This document shows, in pieces, positions 16,761-60,365 of a stretch of DNA of 64,000 nucleotides; the first letter of the stretch is position 1; each line of letters opens with the position of its first letter. Source of the DNA: Octopus sinensis (lineage: Eukaryota); assembly GCF_006345805.1 (NCBI RefSeq), contig NC_043001.1, positions 107,198,001-107,262,000 of the forward strand. The letters are read 5' to 3'. The notes below the pieces were generated by a model. It was not told where the DNA came from. It did no database searches and worked only from the letters and a program-made list of their open reading frames with translations. Both the position numbers and the translations under genes were made by a program.

Positions 16761-17690
16761 ATATCTATCTATTATATATATATATAATATATATATATTA
16801 TATATTATATATATATATGTTATATAAAAAAAAAGCAATAGGTATATATATATATTTATATATACCTAATCATTTTATTATTTTATAATAGCCTATATGA
16901 ATTAACCTATTTTTGTACGCCTCTAAATTCATATTTAGCTTATATAAAACAATACCGACATCTTCACAACTTAGTATGAACTGCTTAGATTATAATTTAA
17001 TTAATATATATATTGATAGTTAGCATGTCCTTTCGCCTCAGTATTTCTTTATTGAATACCAGTAAATGCCAATGACCTATCTTCATTGATGCCATCTAAA
17101 AAGTTAATATTTATGTATGTGATATGTATAAATATTAAACTATTTCTATGCAATTTCTTTTCCTCCCTCTATTGTGGTAAAATTTGGTATATACTCAAAA
17201 GTATTCAAAAAATTTAATCCGTTTGTTATAACGTATTGCGTATCAGGGGAGGCAACTTGTCCCTGAGTTAGTGTTCATATCTGTATATATGAATATATAT
17301 ATATATATATACATATATATAGTGTTAGGTGTGGTGTACAGAAAATTATTATTGAGAAAAAAATGTCGTCAGAATTTTGGAAGAAAAATCTTTTTATTTC
17401 TTTAATATTATTAGTGCTTTCGTTCGCTTCTCGATCTTGTCAAATTAAATTTTGTGAATGTAAAAACGGCTTGTTCATTTATATAAAGGAGATGTGTTTT
17501 TGTGTGTTTTGTTTAGGAGGGAACATTGTTTTTGTTTTGGGGTGATGTTCCATGATAATGGAGATGGATAGGTAGATAGATAGATAGGTAGATAGATAGA
17601 CAGAAAGATAGATAGATAAATAGATACATAGTGAGACAGATAATGGAGAAATAAAAATACTTTTTCCAAAATTCTCAATAACACACATGT

Positions 17691-36409: not shown

Positions 36410-37148
36410 CACTTTCAGTTTGATCACTTTGACCGACCAGTCCGTCAGGCGTCCATTTGACACCGCTGGTCACAGCCCGCTGTCCACTCCTCTCTGGATC
36501 GCACCTTTCTCATCCACGTGATCCCAATCGTCCTCCTGAAATCGTAATTCCACCGTCGTGGAGGTCTTCCGGGTGGTCTTTTCCGCTCACGCGGGTACCA
36601 CTCGACAACTGCGTGCGTCCACCGATTATCGGTGAGCCGGGCGACGTGTCCAGCCCATCTATACTCGCTGCGTGTATACTCTGCGATGACATCTCTCACG
36701 CCGGACTTCTTTCTGGTGATCTTGCTACTTATGTGCTCTCTCAACGAGATACCAAGCATTGACCTTTCCATGGCTCTTTGAGCCGTTACCAGTCTTTGCT
36801 CTTCTCTCTTTGTGGTAGCCCATGTTTCACTACCATATAACATTGCAGGCAGAACTGCACTGTTAATGAGGTTGGCGCGGGTGGTCCTGTCCAACCTTCT
36901 CTTGAGCACATCCCTTATGCCATTGAACGCCTTCCATCCGGCCCTTACTCAGTGGAAAGAGTCAAATACCATCCCGCTGTATAAGAAGGGCGACAGAGAA
37001 GATCTAAAGAACTACCGACCCAAATGCCTGCTGTCTCACGTGTACAAGCTGTTCACGAAGATAATTCTGAACAGGTTGTCACGTCGTCTCGACGAACAAC
37101 AACCGAGGGAGCAAGCAGGCTTCCGGAAGAACTACAGCACAATGGACC
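36410..37148. mobile_element. RTE-clade LINE with a 5' inversion (3' part on -, RT part on +)
   Basis: Minus 36950-36410: LPAMLYGSETW..RWAGHVAR..GRPPRRW. Plus 36950-37148: WKESNTIPLYKKGD..NYRP..EQAGFR..STMDH. Confidence 0.88.
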
Positions 37149-43284: not shown

Positions 43285-43640
43285 TCTACATGAGGCACAA
43301 GATCTGAAATTCTGGAAAAAATATTCAGTCGATTACGTCGATCCAAGTGCTCAACTGGTACTTATTTTATCGACACCGAAAGGAAGAAAGGCAAAGCCGA
43401 CCTCGGCGGAATTTGAACTCAGGACGTAAAGACGGACGAAATGCCGCTAAGCAATTTTCCCGACGTGCTAACGATTCTGCCGGCTCGCCTAATAATCCAC
43501 TCTACTATACCCACAAGGCCTGAAATTTGGGGGAGGGGTAAGTCGATTACATTGACACCCAGTGTTTTACTGGTACTTAATTTATCGACCCCGAAAAGAT
43601 GAAAGGCAAAGTTGACCTCGGCGGCAGCTAACCTATTAAT
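43285..43640 (-). mobile_element. Two SINE S1 copies (one internally deleted)
   Basis: S1 body motifs ATCGACCCCGAAAGGATGAAAGGCAAAG on this strand. Confidence 0.8.
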
Positions 43641-43646
43641 AATAAC

Positions 43647-43679
<33 letters not shown>

Positions 43680-43730
43680 TAATAATAATAATAATAATAA
43701 TGATAATAATAATAATGATAATAATAATAA

Positions 43731-43797
43731 CAAGCTGGCTCTGGGTGAGACTTGGAGTCAGCTTGTGCAAATGTAATGCAAAAGTCAAACATAGAAT
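43731..43797 (+). mobile_element. ~65 bp Dong family B 3' tip within (TAA)n
   Basis: CTCTGGGTGAGACTTGGAG..GCAAAAGTCAAACATAG matches 48490-48546. Confidence 0.85.
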
Positions 43798-43811
43798 AAT
43801 AATAATAATAA

Positions 43812-44501
43812 TGTAAATGATAAGTGCATAAAGCGATAAGTGCAGAATCTGTGGACAAAATAAGAAAGAGATAAGTGCAGAATCTATGGACAAAACGATG
43901 AAACTGTATGGTATATTACCAGCCAATGTACGCCACTAGCGCAGAAGGAATATAAGAGACGACACGACAATATAGCCAGGCTTGTCCATTGGACAGTTTG
44001 CAACAAATATGGACTTGACAGAGCAAAAAATTGGTACGACCACAAACCTGAAGGCATCGTCGAAAATGGAAAGGCAAAGATCCTATGGGATTTTATGATT
44101 CAGTGCAACCGTGAGATAGAAAATAGGAAGCCGGACATAGTCTTAATTGAGAAAGAAAGCAAACTATGCTGTATCATAGATATAGCATGCGCAGCTGGCA
44201 ACAAGGTATGCGATAAGGAAGAAAGAAAAGTCGAGAGATGTGACAAGTTAGCTTGGGAAGTTAAGCAGTTGTAGTCGATGAAAGAGGTAGTAGTAGTAGT
44301 ACCAATAATTGTCGGAGCCCTGGTAAGAGTGAGCAAAAATCTCGAGAAGTACGTGGAACAAATATGGGCAGCAATAAGGGTGGAGTACTTGCAGGAAGCA
44401 GCACTGCTTGGAACCGCTCGAATATTCCGGAAGGTGCTCGAAAAATAAGAGTGAACAGCTGACACTGTAGTACGTCTCCAGCGTTAGAAGCTGTGCAAGG
44501 C

Positions 44502-44502
<1 letters not shown>
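43812..44502 (+). mobile_element. Dong family A, 5'-truncated (CCHC and RLE)
   Basis: DKCRI..ETVWYITSQC..RHDNIARLVHW..KPDIV..IIDIAC..VPIIVGAL..LLGTARIFRKVLE*, followed by a 3'UTR and (AAT)n. Confidence 0.9.
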
Positions 44503-44554
<52 letters not shown>

Positions 44555-44556
<2 letters not shown>

Positions 44557-45053
44557 TGGCTTCTAATCTTAACTGATTGGAAGTATTATCATGTACATTG
44601 TTTTGTCTTGGTATAAAAGATGGGCTACAGCAAATATTCTGCTCAATACCACAGATTTGCTTGTCAGTTGTTTGACCTTAACCAGTTGAGCATATCCCTT
44701 AGTGGCTGACGATATGTGCATCTCTGATCACGAGCAGAAGTAGTGGGGGAGCATCATAGCCATGTGTTGAGAGGTATTCTTTGGGGTTTAAATAATTCCC
44801 CTCTGGAAACATGGGTGGTTCTTTCAACATCCTTAAACAACCCTTATTCAGGGACCTGAAGAAAATTCTAACTGGGCCCCACCTGCAAGGTCATGTGCTG
44901 TTTATCTTGATATGAGATCACCATGTCGCGCACATATGGTTGTGATGCATGTGCCTGGTGTACCCTTATCAGACGGGTAGTCATGATGGGTATATTGGGC
45001 TTCGTATATTTTATCCCAATGTCACTTTGATGGCATGTACTGCTCTCTCACTC
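44555..45053 (+). mobile_element. Non-coding element X, copy 1 (5'-truncated, complete 3' end)
   Basis: Flanked by (TAA)n on both sides and matches 45330-45722 and 56465-56640. Confidence 0.8.
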
Positions 45054-45084
45054 AATAATAATAATAATAATAATGATAATAATG

Positions 45085-45120
<36 letters not shown>

Positions 45121-45268
45121 TAATAATAATAATAATAACAATAATAATAGTAATAATAGTTAATAATAATAATAATAATAATAAATAATAATAATAATAA
45201 TTATTATTATTATTATATTATTATTATTATTATTATTATTATTTATAATATTAATAATAATAATAATA

Positions 45269-45300
<32 letters not shown>

Positions 45301-45329
45301 TAATAATAATAATAATATAATAATAATAA

Positions 45330-45722
45330 ATGCCCTGATGCAGTACCAGGAAGTGGCTCTCATGGCTTCTGATCTTAACTGATTGGAAGTGTTATCATGT
45401 ACATTGTTTTGTCTTGGTATAAAAGATGGGCTACAGCAAGTATTCTGCTCAATACCACAGATTTGCTTGTCAGTTGTATGACCTTAACCAGTCAAGCATG
45501 TCCCTTAGTGGCTGACGATATGTGCATCTCTGATCACGAGCAGAAGTATTTGAGGAGCATCATAACCATGTATTGAGATGGATTCTCTGGGGTTTGAATA
45601 ATTCACCTCTGGAAACATGGGTGTTTCGTTCAACATCCTTAAACAACCTTTATTCAGGGACCTTTTGAGTAGGATGGGTTACTCGACCAGAAGAAAATTC
45701 TAACTGGGCTCCATCTGCAAAT
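45330..45722 (+). mobile_element. Element X, copy 2 (complete 5' end, interrupted by an S1 fragment at 45727-45793)
   Basis: Starts ATGCCCTGATGCAGTACCAGG directly after (TAA)n. Confidence 0.8.
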
Positions 45723-45826
45723 GTTTCACTGGTACTTAATTTATCGACCACGAAAGGATGAAAGGCAAAGTTAACCCTGATGGCAGCTCGCCTAATAATA
45801 ATAATAATAATGATAATAATAATAAT

Positions 45827-45886
<60 letters not shown>

Positions 45887-45887
<1 letters not shown>

Positions 45888-48544
45888 CGTTTACTGCAGG
45901 GTCTGTACCATCAAAAGAAGAAGTGCAGAGATTTTGGAATAAAATCTGGGCAGAAGAAAAAACACACAACGAAAAGGCCCCCTGGATTGACAGAATATCT
46001 ACAGAACTGGACCCCTTAGAAGAGCAAAAGTGGGAGGGTGTCAAGGTAGAAGATATAAGATCTGCTCTCAGGAGGTCAAGCAAATGGAAGTCTCCAGGAA
46101 AGGATAAAATTCCTAACTTCTGGCTGAATGCCTTCCCAGAGAGCCATGAACTGCTAACATAACTGTACAATGATGTTTTGCAACACCCTAGTAGGATGCC
46201 TCCTTGGCTAGTTAATGGGTTAACATTCCTGCTTCCAAAAAGTGAAGAAACAAATGAACCAAAAAACTATAGACCCATAACCTGCTTAACAACTATGTAC
46301 AAAACACTAACATCTGTCCTGACGGAATATACCTATAGGTTTTTAACAGACAGCAGCATATTCCCTAATGAACAGAAAGGATGTAAAGACCAACTACTCA
46401 TCAATAAGATGATCTTAGAAGATTGTCACAAACGACACAAAAACTTATCAATAGCCTGGATAGACTATAAAAAGGCTTTTGATAGCCTACCACATAGCTG
46501 GATTAGGAAATGCCTTGAAATGTATAAGATAGCACCAACTCTGCGAAACTTCTTGACTGTAAGTATGAGATCATGGAGAACCACACTAACTCTGAACAGT
46601 GACAGTGAATCCCTAAATGCTGGTGATGTAAAAATTTCGTGTGGAATTTTCCAGGGTGACTCACTGTCACCACTCCTCTTTTGTTTATCCTTAATACCTC
46701 TCTCAAAGCTGCTCAATGACGCGCAGTACGGGTATAAAATGTTTGATAAAAATATAAATCATCTCGTTTACATGGATGATTTAAAGCTTTTTGCAAAAAA
46801 TGATCAACAACTCAAGGGCTTACTAGCGATAGTCAAACAATTCAGTGACGACATCAGAATGCAATTCGGCCTCGATAAATGTGCAAAGGCTACCTTTATC
46901 AAAGGAAAAATGACAGAAACATCTAACGTTAACCTTGACCAACAGAATGTCATAAAAGAACTAGACCCAGCGGAGAGCTACAAGTACCTAGGGATAATTG
47001 AAGGGAACGGAATAAGGCATTCAGAGATGAAGGAAAGGATCAGGAGAGAATGCTATCGAAGAGTGAGAGCAATACTCAAGACAGAGCTGAATGCAAGAAA
47101 CAGGATCGAAGCAATCAATGCATTAGCTATACCAGTCGTGACTTACAGTTTCAATATTGTTAACTGGTCAATTACTGAAATATGTCAGCTCGACAGAAAA
47201 ATAAGGAAACTGTTGACAATGCATAGAATGCACCACCCTAAGGCAGATACAGAACGACTCTATCTGCCAAGAAAAGAGAGAGGCCGTGGTCTTTTGCAAC
47301 TGGCAATAACAATGAAGATTGCTACAATTGGCCTAGACACCTACCTGAAAAACTCTGAGGACTGGATGCTAAAACTTGTCTCAGAACATGAAAACAAGAA
47401 AGCATCATACTCAGTCACAAAACAGGCAAAGGAATATCTAAGTGAATTCCGAATACAACCGATTTCGGAATTAGAGATAGATATACAAGAAACAAGCACA
47501 GAAAAAGCTAGGCGCATGAAAACCCGTGCCAAAACTGCGGCCTTAGATATTCTGAATAATAAATGGCAAGAAAAACCTCTCTATGGCAAATACCCAAAGA
47601 GAGCGAATAATGCAGATATCGACAAAGCCCTGACCCATCAATGGCTAATGGCCTCTGGCTTAAAATCTGAAACAGAGGGGTTTATCATAGCAGCTCAAGA
47701 TCAATGCCTACCAACAAGAAACTACCAGGCCAACATATTAAAGATCAGAAGCAGTCCAACGTGTCGTGTATGCAAGCAACAAAATGAAACCATTGACCAT
47801 GTGGTCTCCAAGTACAGTCTTCTAGCGCCTACAGAGTATCTCAACAGGCACGATAGAGCTGCACAATATATTCACTGGGTAATCTGTAAAAACCTGGATT
47901 TGCCCCATGAAAAAAACTGGTGGGAACACAAACCACCCCCTGCTTGAAAATGACCACATCTCACTCCTCTGGAACTTCACCATTCAAACTGACAGGAAGA
48001 TAGATGCAAATAGGCCAGACATCATATTGAAAGACTTCAAACAAAGAACATGCCTCCTCATTGATATGACTGTCCCAATCGATATAAACGTATCTGTCAA
48101 GACCTACCAAAAACTGAGCAAATATAAAGATCTTGAAATAGAAATCAGCAAAATGTGGAAGCTGAAGACTAAAACAATACCTGTTGTCATAGGTGCCCTG
48201 GGAATGATAGCAAAAGGGGCTGATAGCTACCTAACTCAGATACCAGGAAACCCCAAAATGGCAGAAGTTCAAAAGATAGTGCTCATGGGAACTGCTCATA
48301 TCCTACGCAAAATACTCTCTATGTAATCTCAAGGTTTAAAACAAACATAATTTTCGGTTTAAAAAAAAAAAAAAAACCCCTTTTTTTTTTCTTTTTAGAC
48401 ATTCATTAGTACAACATCCCCACCCCCCAATATATGGCACACTAGGCATAACAACAACATGAACTTCCAACCCTGTTGTCTCTTGAGGTCTCTGGGTGAG
48501 ACTTGGAGCCAACTTGTACAAATATAAAGCAAAAGTCAAACATA

Positions 48545-48546
<2 letters not shown>
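45887..48546 (+). mobile_element. Dong family B, 2.66 kb 5'-truncated copy
   Basis: NYRPITCL, WIDYKKAFDS, GIFQGDSLSP, YMDD, CRVC..H..S knuckle and RPDII..DMTVP..K RLE. One stop at 46160 and a frameshift at ~47940. (TAA)n on both sides. Confidence 0.95.
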
Positions 48547-48620
<74 letters not shown>

Positions 48621-48623
<3 letters not shown>

Positions 48624-50411
48624 GAACTGATCCCACTCTCAAACGAATTGGATAGTACCAGATATGGGTACAAAGTTTTTAGTAAGTCAATAAACCACCT
48701 TTTCTATATGGACGACCTAAAGCTGTTTGCCAGGAATGACCAAGAGCTAGAAGGGCTGCTAACAACTGTTAAAGAGTTTAGCAATGATATCGGAATGGAT
48801 TTTGGCATTGTTAAGTGTGCTAAAGCAACTTTCGTAAGAGGCAAGCTCAGGCAAACAGCTTCTGTTAAATTAGATATTGACACTACCATCAAGGAACTTG
48901 ACCCACAAGAAAGTAACAAATACCTAGGAATCAACGAAGGAGATGGTATACATCATGCTACTATGAAGGAAAAAATAAAAAAGGAATACTATAGGAGAAT
49001 AAGGCTTGTACTGAAGACTGAACTCAACTCCAAAAATTGCATTGAGGCCATTAACACCCTGGCACTTCCAGTAGTCCAGTACAGTTTTAACATCATTAAC
49101 TGGAACCCTACAGAACTCCAACGCTTGGACAGGAAGACAAGAAAATTACTGACATCCAAGAACATGCACCACCCTAAGGCAGATGTAGACCGCGTGTACC
49201 TACCTAGAAGCAGCGGGGGGAGAGGAATGATGCAATTAGAGCTGTGCTATAAGACCCCCACTGTAGGAATGAACAGGTACCTACCTAGTACAAAGGACTG
49301 GATGCTGCGACTTGTGTGCGAACACGAAAGCAGCAAAAAGCTGCATTCTATTGTCAAAGAAGCTTATAAGTTCGAAAGGGAACTAGACATTGACCTTGAA
49401 TCAGATGAAGAGCCGGAAACCACTGCTACCAAGCAAGCAAAGCGAATCAAGCAGACTGCAAAAAAGAACGGGCAGAATCAAATTGAGAGGCGGTGGAGCC
49501 AGAAGCCCCTGTATGGACAATATATTCTCCGAAGCCAAAATGCTGATGTAGACCAAGCAACAACCCATCAGTGGCTGAAGAGTTCAGGATTGAAAGCAGA
49601 GACTGAAGGCTTCATACTGGCAGCACAAGATCAAAGCTTGTTTACCAGAAATTACCAGGCTAACGTTCTCCGAAACGGTACTGACCCTAAATGCAGATTC
49701 TGCAACACATTTGACGAAACAATAGACCATCTCGTTTCGGGATGTCCTGTGCTGACACCAAACGAATACAAAAATCGCCACGATAGGGTAGGACAGTATA
49801 TACATTGGAAGATATGTAAACACTACAAATTCGGCACTCCTGCTAACTGGTATGAACACCATCCTCAGCCAGTTGTTGAAGGTAAAAATGTCATCATCCT
49901 CTGGGATTTTCCAGTCAACACTGACAGAACGATCAAGGCTAATCGACCAGACATAATTGTTAAAGACAGGGAAGAAAATACCTGCAGACTAATAGAGGTA
50001 AGCGTCCCCACTGATAAAAATATATCTGTAAAGGAATTTGACAAACTTAGTAAATACAAGGACCTGGAAATCGAAATACAAAAGATGTGGAATCTTAAAA
50101 CAAAAACTGTTCCTGTTATTGTAGGTGCCATAGGTATGATAAAAAAGGGATGTCAGAAACACATAGACAATATCCCTGGAGAACCATGTCTCAAGGAAAT
50201 CCAAAAGATTGTGCAAACAAGTACTGCCCACATCCTTAGAAAAATCCTATCAATGTAAATGTTTGTGTTGTATTACATGGAGATATTTCTCTACTTCTCC
50301 TCCCCAAGCTTTCAGCTATATTTCAACAACTCTTAACCTTCACTTGCCCTAGGGCGCTGGGTGTGCCCCGGCAAGTGATTACATCAAACATGCAGATTAA
50401 AAGTAAATGAC
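48621..50411 (+). mobile_element. Dong family C, 5'-truncated, uninterrupted 545 aa ORF
   Basis: FYMDD, HPKADVDR, CRFC..H..SGC, RHD, RPDII..EVSVPTD..KY. 3'UTR then (AAT)n. Confidence 0.95.
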
Positions 50412-50496
<85 letters not shown>

Positions 50497-50527
50497 TAAT
50501 AATAACAATAATAATAATAATAATAAT

Positions 50528-51930
50528 GCACGTAACAAGGTGTTAGCTATAAATTCCTTAGCAGTTCCAGTTGTTACTTATAGCTACAATGTGTTGAACT
50601 GGAATATGAGTGAAGTAAAGAATATAGATAGGAAAATACGCAAGCTGCTGAGTTGTAATAGGATGCACCACCCAAAGGCAGACGTGGATCGCCTTTACCT
50701 TCCCAGAGCCCAAGGAGGTCGAGGCCTGATCCAATTTGAACTAACTTACAAAACAATCACAATTGGACTGGCCAAATATCTCGAAATAACGAATGACTGG
50801 ATGCTAAAGCTCGTGGAAAATCACGAGAGACGAAAGAAGCTTCATTCTATCATAAAGGAAAGCAAAAAATTTGCTATTGATCTCGTGCAGGATACCCAAA
50901 CTGAACAACCCGAGGGAAGTACGGCAACTATTGTTGCAAAGATGGTAAAAATAATGGCAATGAAAAAAGCGCACGAGCAATTGGCTGATAGGTGGGAGGA
51001 GAAACCTCTGCACGGCAAATATGTGGCCCGCAGCAAACAAGCTGATGTTGACCATAAGCAAACCCATCAGTGGCTCGGAGCTCAGGGCTAAAAGCAGAGA
51101 GCGAAGGTTTCATCCTGGCTGCTCAAGATCAAAGCCTATTAACCCGGAACTACCAGGCCAATGTGATGAAAAATGGAGCAGACCCAAAATGCCGATTCTG
51201 CAACGACATGATTGAAACAGTGGACCACCTAATCTCTGGATGTAAAGTCTTAGCACCAGTGGAGTATAAATTAAGACATGACAGAGTTGGCCAATATCTA
51301 CACTGGCTAATAAGTCGGCATTACAATATCAAAACTGGCGACAAGTGGTATAATCACCACCCTGAGGCTGTAACTGAAGGAGAAAATGTAACCATTCTGT
51401 GGGACTTTCCAGTACATACAGACCGAACCATCAAGGCCAATAAACCAGATATTGTTGTGAAAGACCAAAACAATAAATTTTGCTTATTGATCGACATGAG
51501 CATCCCCTGTGATCATAATATCTCAGCGAAAGAGTTTGACAAGCTCAGAAAATATAAAGACCTACTCATTGAAATTGAGAAAATGTGGCATCTCAAGGCG
51601 GTTACAATACCAGTGATCGTAGGAGCACTAGGAATGATCAAGAAGGGAACCGAAAATTATATGAGAATGATCCCTGGCTTACCATCCCTGCAAGAAGTGC
51701 AAAAGATTGTCTTAACTGGTACATCACACGTATTGAGAAGAGCATTGTCGATGTGAGAACTGTTGCTGCTCATGTATTTTAATTTAACTTAAAAAAAAAA
51801 AATTTTTTTTAAATGAACGAACTATTGAGTTTGGTTTAATGGCCTACCAATGTATACTGAGTTTCCTTGCCCTAGGAGTCGGGAAGACACTCGGCAAGAA
51901 ATGGAAGCAAATTTGAAAGAAGAAAAAAAG
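50528..51930 (+). mobile_element. Dong family D, 5'-truncated with one frameshift
   Basis: ORFs 50540-51091 and 51070-51756 carry the thumb, CCHC and KPDIV..DMSIPCD RLE. (TAA)n on both sides. Confidence 0.95.
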
Positions 51931-51948
51931 TAATAATAATAATAATAA

Positions 51949-51999
<51 letters not shown>

Positions 52000-52047
52000 T
52001 ATTATTATTATTATTATTATTATTTATTATTATTATTATTTTTATTA

Positions 52048-52111
<64 letters not shown>

Positions 52112-52115
52112 GATT
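51930..52115. repeat. (TAA)n abutting (TTA)n, forming an AT-rich quasi-palindrome
   Basis: Strand switch at ~52000. The (TTA)n part is the tail of a minus-strand S1 at 52120-52250. Confidence 0.9.
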
Positions 52116-53063
52116 ATGACATTCTTTTCTACTCTAGGCAGAAGGCCCGAAATTTTGGGTGAGGGGGCGGTCGATTAAACCGACTCCAGTATGCAACTAG
52201 TGCTTAATTTATTGACCCCGAAAGGATGAAAATTATTATTAGGCAGCTTGCCTAATAACAATAAGTTGAAATATTTCTTTATCATTCATAGACCTTGTTA
52301 TACAACCACTGAAAATATTGCCCTTCACACGTCCTATTACAGGTAATAGTGCAGCTTTTCATATCACTCGTGATTGTCTGCAATAAAAAGTAGCTATGGA
52401 TTGTATGGTGGTAGTACATAGCATTATGATTAAAAAGAAACCTGGTGAATAGCCTCAAATAATTTCAAGCATGAAGCTACTCGGTTAGGTAGTAACTTGT
52501 TTCTAAACAACAGAAATAATACACAGCTATAGAGCGTTTACGTTGTTCAACCTAGATCCGACAAATATACTTGAGGTCACGCACTACTGACTGAAATGCG
52601 TTGCACACTTTGGATAATGTAGGCCTAGATCTGTGGCTTGTGAGCAGTGTATTAAAGCGACATCTATCTTTTAGTTGTGACAGTCATTAGACAGCGGCCA
52701 TGTTAGGGCACCGCCTTCAAGAGTTTTTCGTCGAATGAATAGATCCTACTTCTTCCTAAGTAATAAAATAACCTGTATCTATTCTCCATAGCTAAATATT
52801 ATGAAGAGTCTATAAATAGTAAAACACTTGCCAAGCCAATGGTGGTAACCTCTACTTGGTCAAGGGATTTGCTAAAAGTAGCCACCAAATTTCCTTCAAA
52901 TCGCAACCTGTCGTCGTAAAAGAGAAGGCTTCATTGGAAAATGTAATCCTAGATAAATATCTGAATAATAAGCAATAAGTAGGGTAATAAAAATGACAAG
53001 CAAGAGATATTTGCAATATTACGAATTAGAGAAAATGTCGGCAACTTCGAATCTAAATACTTA

Positions 53064-53123
<60 letters not shown>

Positions 53124-53501
53124 CAATACCGTATCAATACCGGCAGATGACAACGTGTCTCTAAAAGAAATGGAGAAACTCACAAAATACAAAGACCTGG
53201 AAATAGAGGTAACTAGAATGTGGAACCTGAAAACAGAAACAATTCCTATCATAGTAGGTGCATTAGGCATGATAAAAAAATATTCAGACAAATACATAAC
53301 AAAAACACCAGGACTTACAAACACATATAACATACAGAAAATTGCACTACTAGGCACTGCACACATCCTACGCAGAACACTTTCCATACAATAACCATCA
53401 GAGCATCACAACAAATCACAGCACATACCCAAGGCACACAGAGCTGCGCTCGGTAGTGAAGTGAAAGCACGCTATAAAAATAAAAATAAAACTACTGAAT
53501 A

Positions 53502-53536
<35 letters not shown>

Positions 53537-53758
53537 AATAATAATAATGGTCTCAAATTTTGTCACAAGGGCAGCAATTTTGGGGCAGGGGATGAGTCGA
53601 TTACATCGGCTCCAGTGTTCAACTGGTCCTTATTTTATCGACCCTAAAAGGATGAAAGGCAACGTTGACCTGGGCAGAATTTGAACTCAGAACGTAGCGA
53701 CGGTCGAAATACTGCTAAGCATTTCGTCCAGCACGCTAACGATTCTGCAAGCTCGCGG

Positions 53759-53834
<76 letters not shown>

Positions 53835-54688
53835 TAATAAATACTGGACTAAACTAAACGCAAAAGAAATAGACAAAGAAAAATCCCAGCAATGGTTGAG
53901 AAGCTCAGGACTCAAAGCGGAAACAGAGGGATTTTTAATTGCAGCACAAGACCAAAGCCTCCCCACCAGAAATTACCAAAGACATGTAATGAAAAGAAAT
54001 ATTACAAGTAACTGCAGAATATGTGGAGATGGACAAGAAACAATAAATCATATTATCTCTAGCTGCCCAGTCCTGGCTAAGAAGGAATATATTCACAGAC
54101 ATGACAGAGTTGGAACTTACATACATTGGAAGCTATGCCAACATTATGGAATAACAACAGAAAAAAGATGGTATAGGCACACACCAGAAAAGGTCACAGA
54201 AAACGAGAAAGCAACCATACTCTGGGATATGCCGATACACACAGATAGAGAAATTAAGGCCAACAGACCAGATATAGTTGTCAGAGACCATGAAGAAAAA
54301 AAATGCTTTCTAATTGATGTATCAGTACCGGCAGATGACAACGTGTCTCTAAAAGAAATGGAGAAACTCTCAAAATACAAAGACCTGGAAATAGAGGTAA
54401 CTAGAATGTGGAATCTGAAAACAGAAACAATTCCTATCATAGTAGGTGCATTAGGCATGATAAAAAAATATTCAGACAATACATAACAAAAACACCAGGA
54501 CTTACAAACACATATAACATACAGAAAATTGCACTACTAGGCACTGCACACATCCTACGCAGAACACTTTCCATACAATAACCATCAGAGCATCACAACA
54601 AATCACATCACATACCCAAGGCACACAGAGCTGCGCTCGGTAGTGAAGTGAAAGCACGCTATAAAAATAAAAATAAAACTACTGAATA

Positions 54689-54723
<35 letters not shown>

Positions 54724-54945
54724 AATAATAATAATGGTCTCAAATTTTGTCACAAGGGCAGCAATTTTGGGGCAGGGGATGAGTCGATTACATCGGCTCC
54801 AGTGTTCAACTGGTCCTTATTTTATCGACCCTAAAAGGATGAAAGGCAAAGTTGACCTGGGCAGAATTTGAACTCAGAACGTAGCGACGGTCGAAATACT
54901 GCTAAGCATTTCGTCCAGCACGCTAACGATTCTGCAAGCTCGCGG

Positions 54946-55035
<90 letters not shown>

Positions 55036-55876
55036 CTGGACTAAACTAAACGCAAAAGAAATAGACAAAGAAAAATCCCAGCAATGGTTGAGAAGCTCAG
55101 GACTCAAAGCGGAAACAGAGGGATTTTTAATTGCAGCACAAGACCAAAGCCTCCCCACCAGAAATTACCAAAGACATGTAATGAAAAGAAATATTACAAG
55201 TAACTGCAGAATATGTGGAGATGGACAAGAAACAATAAATCATATTATCTCTAGCTGCCCAGTCCTGGCTAAGAAGGAATATATTCACAGACATGACAGA
55301 GTTGGAACTTACATACATTGGAAGCTATGCCAACATTATGGAATAACAACAGAAAAAAGATGGTATAGGCACACACCAGAAAAGGTCACAGAAAACGAGA
55401 AGCAACCATACTCTGGGATATGCCGATACACACAGATAGAGAAATTAAGGCCAACAGACCAGATATAGTTGTCAGAGACCATGAAGAAAAAAAATGCTTT
55501 CTAATTGATGTATCAGTACCGGCAGATGACAACGTGTCTCTAAAAGAAATGGAGAAACTCTCAAAATACAAGACCTGGAAATAGAGGTAACTAGAATGTG
55601 GAATCTGAAAACAGAAACAATTCCTATCATAGTAGGTGCATTAGCATGATAAAAAAATATTCAGACAAATACATAACAAAAACACCAGGACTTACAAACA
55701 CATATAACATACAGAAAATTGCACTACTAGGCACTGCACACATCCTACGCAGAACACTTTCCATACAATAACCATCAGAGCATCACAACAAATCACATCA
55801 CATACCCAAGGCACACAGAGCTGCGCTCGGTAGTGAAGTGAAAGCACGCTATAAAAATAAAAATAAAACTACTGAA
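53124..55876 (+). mobile_element. Dong family E array: E1 (53124-53500), S1(-), E2 (53841-54686), S1(-), E3 (55033-55876)
   Basis: RLE ORF pieces RPDIV..DVSVPADD..KY with identical 3'UTRs. E2 and E3 share the 5' breakpoint and the upstream SINE. Period is ~1.19 kb. Confidence 0.92.
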
Positions 55877-55904
55877 TAATAATAATAATAATAATGATAA
55901 TAAT

Positions 55905-56398
55905 ACAAAGCCAATAAACCGGATATTGTTGTGAAAGACCAAAACAATAAAGTTTGCTTATTGATCGTCATGAGTATCCCCTGTGATCATAATACCTCGG
56001 CAAAAGAGTTTGACAAGCTCAGAAAATATAAAGACCTGCTCATTGAAATTGAGAAAATGTGGCATATCAAGGCGGTTACAGTACCAGTGATCGTAGGAGC
56101 ACTAGGAATGATCAAGAAGGGAACCGAAAATTACATGAGAATGATCCCTGGCTTACCGTCCCTGCAAGAAGTGCAAAAGATTGTCTTAACTGGTACATCA
56201 CACGTATTGAGAAGATCATTGTCGATGTTAGAACTATTACTACCCATGTATTTTAATTTAACTTAAAAACAAAAATGAACGAACTAGTGAGTTTAGTTTA
56301 ATGGCCTACCAATGTATACTAGGAGTTTCTTTGCCCTAGGAGTCGGGAAGTCACTCGGCAAGAAATGGAAGCAAATTTGATAGAAGAGGAAAAAAAAG

Positions 56399-56400
<2 letters not shown>
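55905..56400 (+). mobile_element. Second Dong family D copy, short
   Basis: KDQNNKVCLLI.MSIPCD..TGTSHVLRR and a 3'UTR matching 51757-51930. Confidence 0.92.
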
Positions 56401-56449
<49 letters not shown>

Positions 56450-56464
56450 TAATAATAATAATAA

Positions 56465-56640
56465 ATGCCCTGATGCAGTACCAGGCAGTGGCTCTCGTGG
56501 CTTCTGATTTCAACTGATTGGAAGTGGTACGCACATGTTTTATCTTGGCATAAATGATGGGCTTCAGTAAAATATCTACTCAATACCACAGATTTGCTTG
56601 TCAGTTGCTTGACCATAACCAGTTGGTCATGTCCCTTATA
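56465..56640 (+). mobile_element. Element X, copy 3 (5' part, diverged)
   Basis: Same start, ATGCCCTGATGCAGTACCAGG, after (TAA)n. Confidence 0.75.
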
Positions 56641-59675: not shown

Positions 59676-59972
59676 GCTTTATACATGTATGAGTCAAAAG
59701 CCCGCCCGCCAGTCGTCTGTTTGGTTGTCTGTCTGCTTCTCTGTTTGCAGATTTAACATTGATTAAAAAAAAGACAAGAAAAACTTAACAACCTTCGCTT
59801 TAATCGATTACAACGTGGGTTCTGGCACTGCATTAGAAATAAAGTTTATATTCGCTACACCACATTACCCTAAGTAACTCTGGTACATTTTGTAGGGTAC
59901 ACGATTTGTATACATGAAACCCCTATTTCATTATGCATGTATGTCTATATATATGACATACATGTAAGAAAA

Positions 59973-60365
59973 GGCGGCGAGCTGGCAGAGACGTTAGCAC
60001 GCCGGGCGAAATGCGTAGTCGTATTTCGTCTGCCGTTATGTTCTGGGTTCAAATTCCGCCGAGGTCGACTTTGCCTTTTATCCTTTCGGGGTCGATTAAA
60101 TAAGTACCAGTTACGCACTGGGGTCCATGTAATCGACTTAATCTGTTTGTCTGTCCTTGTTTGTCCTCTCTGTATTTAGCCCCTTGTGGGTAGTAAAGAA
60201 ATAAGTATTTCGTTTGTCTTCACGTTCTGAGGTCAAATTCCGCCGAGGTCGGCTTTGCCTTTTTTCCTCTGGGATCGATAAGTTAAATACCAGTTGCGTC
60301 CTGGGGTAGATCTAATCGAGTAGCCTCCTCTCCCCAAATTTGGGGTCTTGTGCTTTGAAGAGAAA
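59973..60365 (+). mobile_element. SINE S1 dimer
   Basis: Full head plus a repeated B-box unit. Confidence 0.88.

What the first reader, a model, noticed from the sequence alone, without database searches (positions are those of the whole stretch)
44555..56640. Element X: candidate non-autonomous hitchhiker of the Dong machinery
Seen: ~520 bp, no ORF and no recognisable tRNA head or B box. All three copies are in Dong orientation directly after (TAA)n. Copies 2 and 3 share a precise 5' start, while copy 1 is 5'-truncated but keeps the 3' end plus (AAT)n, as expected for target-primed reverse transcription. The 5' hairpin CTTCTGATC-TTAACT-GATTGGAAG (45366-45389) is preserved by a G-U to A-U change in copy 1. 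The 3' hairpin TACCC-TT-ATCAGAC-GGGTA-GTC-A-TGAT-GGGTA (44961-44992) has a GGG loop like the Dong 3'UTRs. Inference: a site-specific SINE-like element, or the fused UTRs of an extinct Dong family.
Basis: partly seen in the sequence, partly recalled or inferred. Interest (0 to 1): 0.75.

Follow-up and report, generated by a model that had tools for sequence, protein, structure and literature searches.

The report
TAA-tailed non-coding octopus retroposon
Element X is a real non-coding repeat of about 555 bp in octopus genomes that spreads as a (TAA)n-tailed RNA copy, most likely using the enzymes of the neighbouring Dong retrotransposons; it is an ordinary kind of genomic hitchhiker, and its link to Dong is circumstantial.

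Summary
Copies 2 and 3 share one exact 5' start. Copy 1 lacks 31 nt at the 5' end and keeps the 3' end plus (AAT)n.

I fetched about 190 kb of Octopus bimaculoides and O. sinensis DNA and found five more independent copies:
- one full-length 553-bp unit flanked by (TAA)3 and (AAT)9;
- three 5'-truncated copies that keep the 3' end and tail;
- one internal fragment.

So X is a dispersed, discrete, non-coding retroposon with 5'-truncation polarity. It prefers TAA targets (4 of 7 readable junctions against a 0.4% background). It has no TIRs, no pol III boxes and no Rfam match, and a simple descriptor found no HDV-like fold.

Dong is the likeliest driver. It is the only (TAA)n-tailed LINE seen in my sample, and solitary truncated Dong copies show the same junction architecture as X. 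But X shares no sequence with the five Dong 3'UTRs in the window.

The two hairpins are not statistically supported. X is a new member of a known kind, of modest interest.

The parts
44555..45053 (+). X copy 1: lacks the first 31 nt, has a complete 3' end, and belongs to the subfamily without the 26-nt segment
45054..45329 (+). (AAT)n tail of X1, which is also the target array of X2. It is imperfect and holds an inverted (ATT)n stretch at about 45200-45250.
45330..45720 (+). X copy 2: exact 5' end, contains the 26-nt segment (45664-45689), and stops at about X position 391
45721..45792 (+). Last 72 nt of a small SINE-like element, fused to X2 without a TAA spacer. Most simply explained as a deletion within an X-(AAT)n-SINE arrangement like those in L003 and L005.
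   Evidence: (family D13)
45793..45886 (+). (TAA)31 tail after the SINE fragment, which is the target of the next Dong copy
56465..56638 (+). X copy 3: exact 5' end, only the first ~178 nt of X, then unrelated sequence and a reverse (AC)n-containing SINE
44502..44554 (+). (AAT)17 tail of a 5'-truncated Dong copy (family E, 43813-44501), into which X1 inserted
56399..56464 (+). (ATA)22 tail of a 5'-truncated Dong copy (family C-like, 55906-56398), into which X3 inserted
45366..45389 (+). Predicted in X2 and X3 but not in the minimum-energy fold of the full-length L003 copy.
44961..44992 (+).
45887..51930 (+). Three nested 5'-truncated Dong/R4-type LINE copies, each ending in (TAA)n: A 45887-48545, B 48623-50411, C 50528-51930. 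These represent the presumed machinery.

Best explanation
X is a non-autonomous, non-coding retroposon family of about 555 bp in Octopus genomes.

Proposed mechanism:
1. An X transcript ending in (UAA)n is used in trans by the reverse transcriptase and restriction-like endonuclease of a Dong/R4-type LINE.
2. The enzyme nicks the TTA strand of a TAA microsatellite, often the tail of an earlier insertion.
3. The (UAA)n tail pairs with the nicked DNA, and reverse transcription is primed from the target.
4. Complete copies give the fixed 5' start after (TAA)n. Incomplete copies give 5'-truncated elements that keep the 3' end and the (AAT)n tail.
5. Later deletions produced the 3'-truncated copies X2 and X3.

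Shown: the family is real, dispersed, a discrete unit, has truncation polarity and a tail, prefers TAA targets, and lacks coding capacity.

Inferred: Dong is the enzyme donor, the tail pairs with the target, and how X is transcribed (no promoter or ribozyme was found).
For: Family and anatomy:
- There are eight independent copies: three in the window and five in O. bimaculoides loci L003 and L005.
- A full-length 553-bp copy is flanked by (TAA)3 and (AAT)9.
- Three full 5' ends start at the same base.
- Copies retaining about 525, 205, 150 and 46 nt all keep the same 3' end plus (AAT)n.

Amplification over time:
- Copies a, c and d are shared with O. sinensis at 91-93% identity, so they predate that split.
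- X1, X2, b and e are 92-94% identical to one another.
- There are two subfamilies, with and without the 26-nt segment.

Target preference: (TAA)>=3 lies directly upstream in 4 of 7 junctions against a 0.4% background, P = 8e-9.

Link to Dong:
- In about 225 kb of octopus DNA, the identifiable LINE 3' ends that precede (TAA)n arrays are all Dong families A-E.
- Their ORFs match R2-type proteins (E = 8e-23).
- Solitary 5'-truncated Dong-E copies show the same architecture as X copies b, c and e: unique upstream flank, truncated element, (AAT)n.
- All Dong and X copies in the window's landing pad share one orientation.

3'-truncated copies: the O. sinensis orthologue of copy a has lost its 3' 130 nt plus tail by deletion, which shows how such copies arise.

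Background: Dong targets TAA microsatellites, including in a mollusc (PMC3812793), and Dong-R4 is the largest recently active LINE group in O. vulgaris (PMC13282606).
Against: - No sequence similarity links X to the five Dong 3'UTRs in the window. The shared features are only the (TAA)n tail and a hairpin with a G-rich loop, which lies about 75 nt from the tail in X and about 50 nt in Dong A-C.
- Three of seven 5' junctions have no TAA upstream.
- No X copy was found in 97 kb of two further loci, so the abundance estimate is rough and the census is small and biased by how the loci were chosen.
- No promoter, small-RNA head or ribozyme was found, so the transcription step is unexplained.
- A LINE reported from octopus brain and classed as RTE also carries a microsatellite 3'UTR (PMC9115989), so another tailed LINE could be the driver.
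- The short 5'-truncated copies (b, c, e) cannot be told apart from 3' ends of an unseen parent LINE that shares X's tail.
Confidence: 0.6

Rival explanations
1. X is an internally deleted derivative (a SIDE-like element) of a Dong family not represented in the window. It would consist of that family's 5'UTR, possibly with a 5' processing element, joined to its 3'UTR, and would be mobilised by that family or its relatives.
For: - X has a precise 5' end directly after (TAA)n in three copies. This is where B. mori Dong's ribozyme cleaves (PMC3774820).
- X has no pol III head.
- Its size and layout resemble R2 SIDEs (PMC3414825).
- It has a 3' hairpin with a G-rich loop, as in Dong A-C 3'UTRs.
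Against: - X has no similarity to any of the five Dong 3'UTRs present.
- No HDV-like family was hit in Rfam even at E <= 10, and my generic descriptor found no double-pseudoknot fold. That descriptor was run without a positive control.
- No copy in the sample continues from X into ORF sequence.
Confidence: 0.15
2. X is mobilised by a LINE other than Dong that also carries a TAA-type microsatellite tail, for example an RTE-type element. Its presence in TAA arrays would then reflect tail-to-target pairing or an AT-rich cleavage preference rather than Dong's endonuclease.
For: - Three 5'-truncated copies lack upstream TAA.
- An octopus LINE classed as RTE has a microsatellite making up most of its 3'UTR (PMC9115989).
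- There is no sequence link between X and the Dong 3'UTRs.
Against: - Solitary truncated Dong copies also lack upstream TAA, so this feature does not separate the two hypotheses.
- Every identifiable LINE 3' end before a (TAA)n array in the sample is Dong.
- The one RTE-like copy in the window (ORF 36445-36909, minus strand; the clade is my reading of the C-terminal motif and was not tested) is followed by (TG)n/(TA)n, not (TAA)n.
Confidence: 0.2
3. X is not a mobile unit of its own. The three window copies would be local segmental duplicates, or pieces of a larger element such as an ordinary Dong 5'UTR.
For: - The same region holds a near-perfect 1.19-kb tandem duplication (families D4 and D9).
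- X2 and X3 keep only the 5' part.
Against: - Five further copies lie in unrelated flanks on another chromosome-scale record, including a complete copy bounded by (TAA)3 and (AAT)9.
- The copies differ by 6-23%.
- The full-length unit ends in its own tail after 553 bp.
Confidence: 0.03

Closest known systems
Dong, the (TAA)n-specific R4-clade non-LTR retrotransposon (B. mori, A. gambiae, Biomphalaria glabrata; PMC3812793, PMC3774820)
   Same: X has a (TAA)n 3' tail in a fixed orientation, inserts into TAA arrays, shows 5' truncation, and starts exactly at the TAA junction in full-length copies.
   Different: X has no ORF, is about 555 bp rather than several kb, has no sequence similarity to the Dong copies here, and has no detectable HDV-like ribozyme at its 5' end.
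R2 SIDEs, short internally deleted non-autonomous derivatives of a site-specific LINE (PMC3414825)
   Same: Both are short and non-coding, share the target of a restriction-like-endonuclease LINE, have a precise 5' end, and lack a pol III head.
   Different: SIDEs are demonstrably the 5' ribozyme plus 3'UTR of their parent. For X no parent homology was found at the 3' end, and the 5' end could not be tested.
Classical SINEs with a LINE partner, such as the tRNA-derived octopus SINEs of the tRNA-Core and tRNA-Deu classes (PMC8967140)
   Same: Both are non-autonomous, depend on a LINE, show TPRT hallmarks and have a microsatellite-type tail.
   Different: X has no tRNA, 5S, 7SL or snRNA head, no A or B boxes, and no LINE-derived 3' sequence beyond the repeat tail.
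SINEU mobilised by target-specific Tx1 LINEs (PMC4494074)
   Same: This is a precedent for a non-autonomous element that inherits the target preference of a site-specific LINE and may rely on transcription from flanking sequence.
   Different: SINEU has an snRNA-derived head and an APE-type partner. X has neither.

Membership tests
SINE in the strict sense (pol III transcribed, small-RNA-derived head) | Short (under about 700 bp), non-coding, dispersed repeat | tested here: met
   The unit is 553-556 bp, has no ORF over 59 aa, and occurs as 8 independent copies at unrelated sites.
SINE in the strict sense (pol III transcribed, small-RNA-derived head) | 5' head derived from tRNA, 5S, 7SL or snRNA, with an internal pol III promoter (A and B boxes) | tested here: not met
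   ARAGORN finds nothing. Rfam gives no relevant hit even at E <= 10 on short regions. The consensus has no B box and no A box with fewer than 2 mismatches.
SINE in the strict sense (pol III transcribed, small-RNA-derived head) | 3' region derived from the partner LINE | tested here: not met
   BLAST finds no similarity to the five Dong 3'UTRs in the window or to anything else in about 225 kb of octopus DNA except X copies. Only the (TAA)n tail is shared. LINE families absent from the sample were not tested.
Retroposon integrated by target-primed reverse transcription | 5' truncation with a constant 3' end and a repeat tail, and no TIRs | tested here: met
   Copies retaining about 525, 205, 150 and 46 nt all end …CTCTCTC(ACTC) followed by (AAT)n. 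There are no TIRs. The two 3'-truncated copies are explained by deletion, as seen in the O. sinensis orthologue of copy a.
Dong-dependent, (TAA)n-specific element | Insertion into (TAA)n in the Dong orientation | tested here: inconclusive
   Four of 7 readable 5' junctions have (TAA)>=3 directly upstream against a 0.4% background (P = 8e-9). Three do not, but solitary Dong-E copies also lack it.
Dong-dependent, (TAA)n-specific element | Mobilised by the Dong ORF product | not testable with these tools
   This needs a retrotransposition or in vitro TPRT assay.
SIDE (internally deleted LINE) | 5' end homologous to the parent LINE's 5'UTR and ribozyme | not testable with these tools
   All Dong copies in the window and fetched loci are 5'-truncated. 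The long Dong proteins in the database are at most 84% identical to octopus copies and are not octopus. A separate ribozyme search was negative but had no positive control.
SIDE (internally deleted LINE) | 3' end homologous to the parent LINE's 3'UTR | tested here: not met
   X has no similarity to Dong families A-E. An unsampled or extinct family is not excluded.
MITE or DNA transposon | Terminal inverted repeats and a fixed-length target-site duplication | tested here: not met
   Only 5 of 30 terminal positions match in register, and the best offset gives 10. The flanks are TAA repeats of variable length.

The most novel reading that the evidence does not exclude
X would be the first described non-autonomous partner of an R4/Dong-clade LINE. 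Its exact 5' end after (TAA)n would be made by a processing or promoter element unrelated to the HDV-like ribozymes known at the 5' ends of Dong, R4 and R2. For example, this could be a new self-cleaving motif within the first ~100 nt, or transcription that starts in the upstream TAA array.
Probability: 0.12. Interest if true: 0.6.

Novelty: new member of a known kind. Interest (0 to 1): 0.3.

Why it matters
If Dong is the driver, X shows that a microsatellite-specific LINE with a restriction-like endonuclease supports a headless non-autonomous passenger. It would also show that tails left by earlier insertions act as self-renewing landing pads that build the multi-kb nested TAA clusters seen here.

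In practice X explains some (AAT)n microsatellites in octopus introns. It also explains at least one mis-annotated protein start, the N-terminus of O. bimaculoides A0A0L8FVA6.

X is not a new principle. LINE-dependent non-coding retroposons and SIDEs are well known, and a repeat this common is probably already in octopus repeat libraries as an unclassified entry. I could not check this.

Tried and rejected
1. A six-frame translation of X used as a protein query gave one hit only, an O. bimaculoides gene model whose first 36 aa are antisense X. This hit led to the octopus loci.
2. An exact-pattern scan of JGI metagenome contigs for a conserved X 29-mer found nothing.
3. A Dong ORF search returned no octopus protein. 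L001 and L002 are from other organisms and contain neither X nor the octopus SINE. A full-length octopus Dong 5'UTR was therefore not obtainable.
4. I tried to read an empty site for copy b in O. sinensis. The orthologous region is rearranged: it carries a MITE, about 380 bp of other sequence and a different SINE subfamily. It fixed only the 5' junction of copy b.
5. I considered template-switch chimaeras as the explanation for the X2-SINE and SINE-X(e) junctions. I set this aside in favour of plain deletion, because X-(AAT)n-SINE arrangements are common and a deletion of this kind is seen in the O. sinensis orthologue of copy a.
6. The 5' end looked slightly like a U1 snRNA by eye. Rfam does not support this.
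7. Covariation analysis is uninformative by design, because dead copies drift neutrally after insertion.
8. The segment 52256-53063, which ends in (AAT)20, was checked as a possible second passenger. It is essentially unique DNA.
Full report
**Setting**

The window is AT-rich, repeat-dense animal DNA. Coordinates 43637-56464 form two TAA-microsatellite landing pads, separated by about 0.8 kb of unique DNA (52256-53063). The pads are packed with 5'-truncated LINE copies, all on the + strand, each ending in (TAA)n or (AAT)n.

The LINE ORFs carry a reverse transcriptase followed by a CCHC motif and a C-terminal nuclease region. Their nearest solved structures are R2 retrotransposon proteins (E = 8e-23).

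The organism is an octopus. X and the local SINE families recur at 75-95% identity in loci of Octopus bimaculoides and O. sinensis.

**Checking the observation**

BLAST of X against the whole window finds exactly three copies:
- X1 44555-45053
- X2 45330-45720
- X3 56465-56638

All three are on the + strand and each directly follows a TAA-type array.

X2 and X3 begin at the same nucleotide (…TAATAA|ATGCCCTGATGCAG). X1 lacks the first 31 nt and ends …CTCTCTCACTC followed by a long (AAT)n. There is no ORF over 59 aa, no tRNA and no Rfam family.

Three things were not stated or are off:
- The unit is longer than 520 bp. X1 lacks a 26-nt segment that X2 has.
- X2 stops at about position 391 and is fused to the last 72 nt of a small SINE-like element.
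- X3 stops at about position 178 and runs into unrelated DNA.

**Getting more copies**

No eukaryotic DNA collection was searchable directly, so I used a six-frame translation of X as a protein query. The single hit was an O. bimaculoides gene model (UniRef A0A0L8FVA6) whose first 36 residues are an antisense X ORF. A member of its cluster could be located on the genome. This gave:
- L003, 33 kb;
- its neighbour L005;
- the O. sinensis orthologue L004.

A peptide encoded by the abundant octopus SINE was then used to reach two unrelated O. bimaculoides loci, L006 and L007.

In total about 225 kb of non-redundant, non-N sequence was examined (window plus the four O. bimaculoides loci), plus the 29-kb O. 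sinensis orthologue L004.

**The census**

L003 and L005 hold five more independent copies.

| Copy | Location | Content | Flanks |
|---|---|---|---|
| a | L003 17896→17344 | Complete, 553 bp, with the 26-nt segment | …gataataataa upstream; (aat)9 then unique DNA downstream |
| b | L003 ~9953→9748 | Last ~205 nt, without the 26-nt segment | (AAT)10 downstream |
| e | L005 5014-5163 | Last ~150 nt | (AAT)8 downstream |
| c | L003 ~19405→19360 | Last ~46 nt | Long (AAT)n downstream |
| d | L003 28405-28565 | Old internal fragment | None informative |

L006 and L007 (97 kb without Ns) contain none. The copy number is therefore perhaps of the order of 10^4 per genome. This is a rough figure from a small sample that was partly chosen because it contains X.

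Copies a, c and d are present at the orthologous sites in O. sinensis at 91-93% identity, so they predate that species split. X1, X2, b and e are 92-94% identical to each other and look younger. With two subfamilies as well, X has amplified over an extended period.

**What the anatomy says**

X is a discrete unit with a defined 5' end (three copies) and a defined 3' end (six copies). It has no TIRs. Every copy with the 3' end carries (AAT)n. Truncation among tailed copies is always from the 5' side. These are the hallmarks of target-primed reverse transcription.

The 3'-truncated X2 and X3 are best explained by later deletion. In O. sinensis the orthologue of copy a has lost its last ~130 nt plus the tail, and also its 5' part. 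The arrangement X-(AAT)n-SINE occurs at copies b and e, so one deletion inside such an arrangement reproduces X2.

**Target preference**

Of seven readable 5' junctions, four (X1, X2, X3, a) have at least three TAA units immediately upstream. The background for any position in the sampled DNA is 0.4%, giving P = 8e-9. Outside the window cluster the count is 1 of 4, P = 0.016.

Copies b, c and e have no TAA upstream. For b, comparison with O. sinensis places the junction at …gatgaatcacat|CGACC. This does not argue against Dong. Solitary 5'-truncated Dong-E copies (window 41256→41086 and L006 23314-23569) have the same layout of unique upstream flank, truncated element and (AAT)n.

**Who drives it**

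Every identifiable LINE 3' end that precedes a (TAA)n array in the sample is a Dong family, A-E. One RTE-like copy in the window ends in (TG)n/(TA)n instead. Its clade is my reading of the C-terminal motif and was not tested. Dong-R4 is reported as the largest group of recently active LINEs in O. vulgaris (PMC13282606).

Against this, X has no sequence similarity to any of the five Dong 3'UTRs. The only likeness is a hairpin with a G-rich loop:

| Element | Loop | Distance from tail |
|---|---|---|
| Dong A | UGGGU | about 50 nt |
| Dong B | UGGGU | about 50 nt |
| Dong C | GGGAA | about 50 nt |
| X | GGGUA | about 75 nt |

An octopus LINE classed as RTE is also reported to have a microsatellite 3'UTR (PMC9115989). 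Dong is therefore the most likely donor, at about 0.6, but this is not demonstrated.

**Structures, promoter and ribozyme**

The 5' 100 nt fold no better than shuffles in two of three copies (z = -2.1, -0.4, -0.1). The 3' 140 nt give z = -1.9, -1.2, -0.9 and +1.1. Because dead copies drift neutrally, covariation cannot be expected here.

The consensus has no B box and no convincing A box.

B. mori Dong carries an HDV-like ribozyme that cleaves exactly at the TAA/5' junction (PMC3774820). That makes a ribozyme the obvious idea for X's exact 5' end. Rfam finds none even at E <= 10 on short regions. A generic double-pseudoknot descriptor finds none in three copies, while 4-5% of shuffles give a hit. 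That descriptor had no positive control. How X RNA is made remains open.

**The SIDE alternative**

It fails at the 3' end for the five families present. It could not be tested at the 5' end, because no full-length octopus Dong was reachable. I give it about 0.15.

**Verdict**

It is incomplete on the 3' truncations and over-read on the hairpins.
X is a genuine TAA-tailed, TAA-preferring, non-autonomous retroposon without a recognisable head. Dong dependence is plausible but circumstantial.
- X is a new member of a known kind, and may already sit unclassified in octopus repeat libraries. Interest is modest.

Noticed in passing
window 53129-55900: A 1187-1192-bp unit is repeated about 2.3 times in tandem at 98-100% identity. 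The unit consists of a Dong family-D 3' part, (AAT)n, a ~213-bp SINE, (TAA)n and the start of the next Dong-D copy. This looks like a recent unequal exchange between TAA arrays rather than separate insertions.
   Followed up: partly
window 51931-52117 and 45172-45250: The microsatellite switches strand head-to-head: (TAA)23 runs directly into (ATT)40 at 51998, and an inverted (ATT)n block sits inside X1's tail. The cause is unknown. It could be an opposite-strand tail-only insertion or a hairpin-mediated rearrangement.
   Followed up: no
window 53549-53761, 54736-54948, 43500-43636, 52120-52255, 59971-60200; L003 and L005: The abundant octopus SINE sits in TAA arrays with (AAT)n on one side and (TAA)n on the other. 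Its left end often directly follows the tail of X or Dong. A solitary copy at 59971 starts GGCGGCGAGCTGGCAG… (tRNA-like by eye, no Rfam hit) with no TAA at that end. Which strand is the SINE's sense strand, and whether its tail is (ATT)n that then serves as a Dong/X landing pad, is unresolved.
   Followed up: partly
L003 ~17400-17520 (O. bimaculoides CM046623.1): The first 36 residues of UniRef gene model A0A0L8FVA6 (sushi/EGF protein) are an antisense ORF of X copy a. The RefSeq product of this gene, XP_014786617.2, is 642 aa against 655 aa. The N-terminus of the UniRef model looks like an annotation artefact caused by the repeat.
   Followed up: partly
window 48621-50258 (Dong family B ORF): This intact 545-aa ORF is 58-84% identical in protein to ORFs in assemblies labelled shrimp, killifish, coral and hydrozoan, and in several metagenomes. 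One metagenome contig is 83% identical at the DNA level over 1.6 kb. This is unusually high across phyla, and suggests horizontal spread or strong conservation of this Dong lineage.
   Followed up: no
L004 6930-7235 (O. sinensis): A ~300-bp element with long terminal inverted repeats (MITE-like) is inserted in O. sinensis at the site orthologous to the 5' flank of X copy b. It is absent from O. bimaculoides.
   Followed up: no
window 36445-36909 (minus strand): The C-terminal part of an RTE/BovB-like ORF (clade assigned by eye, not tested) has a ~40-nt 3'UTR followed by (TG)n/(TA)n repeats. This is a different tail type from the Dong copies.
   Followed up: partly
window 43730-43794: A 65-nt Dong family-A 3' end plus (AAT)6 lies inside the array. 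This extreme 5' truncation is comparable to X copy c (46 nt).
   Followed up: no
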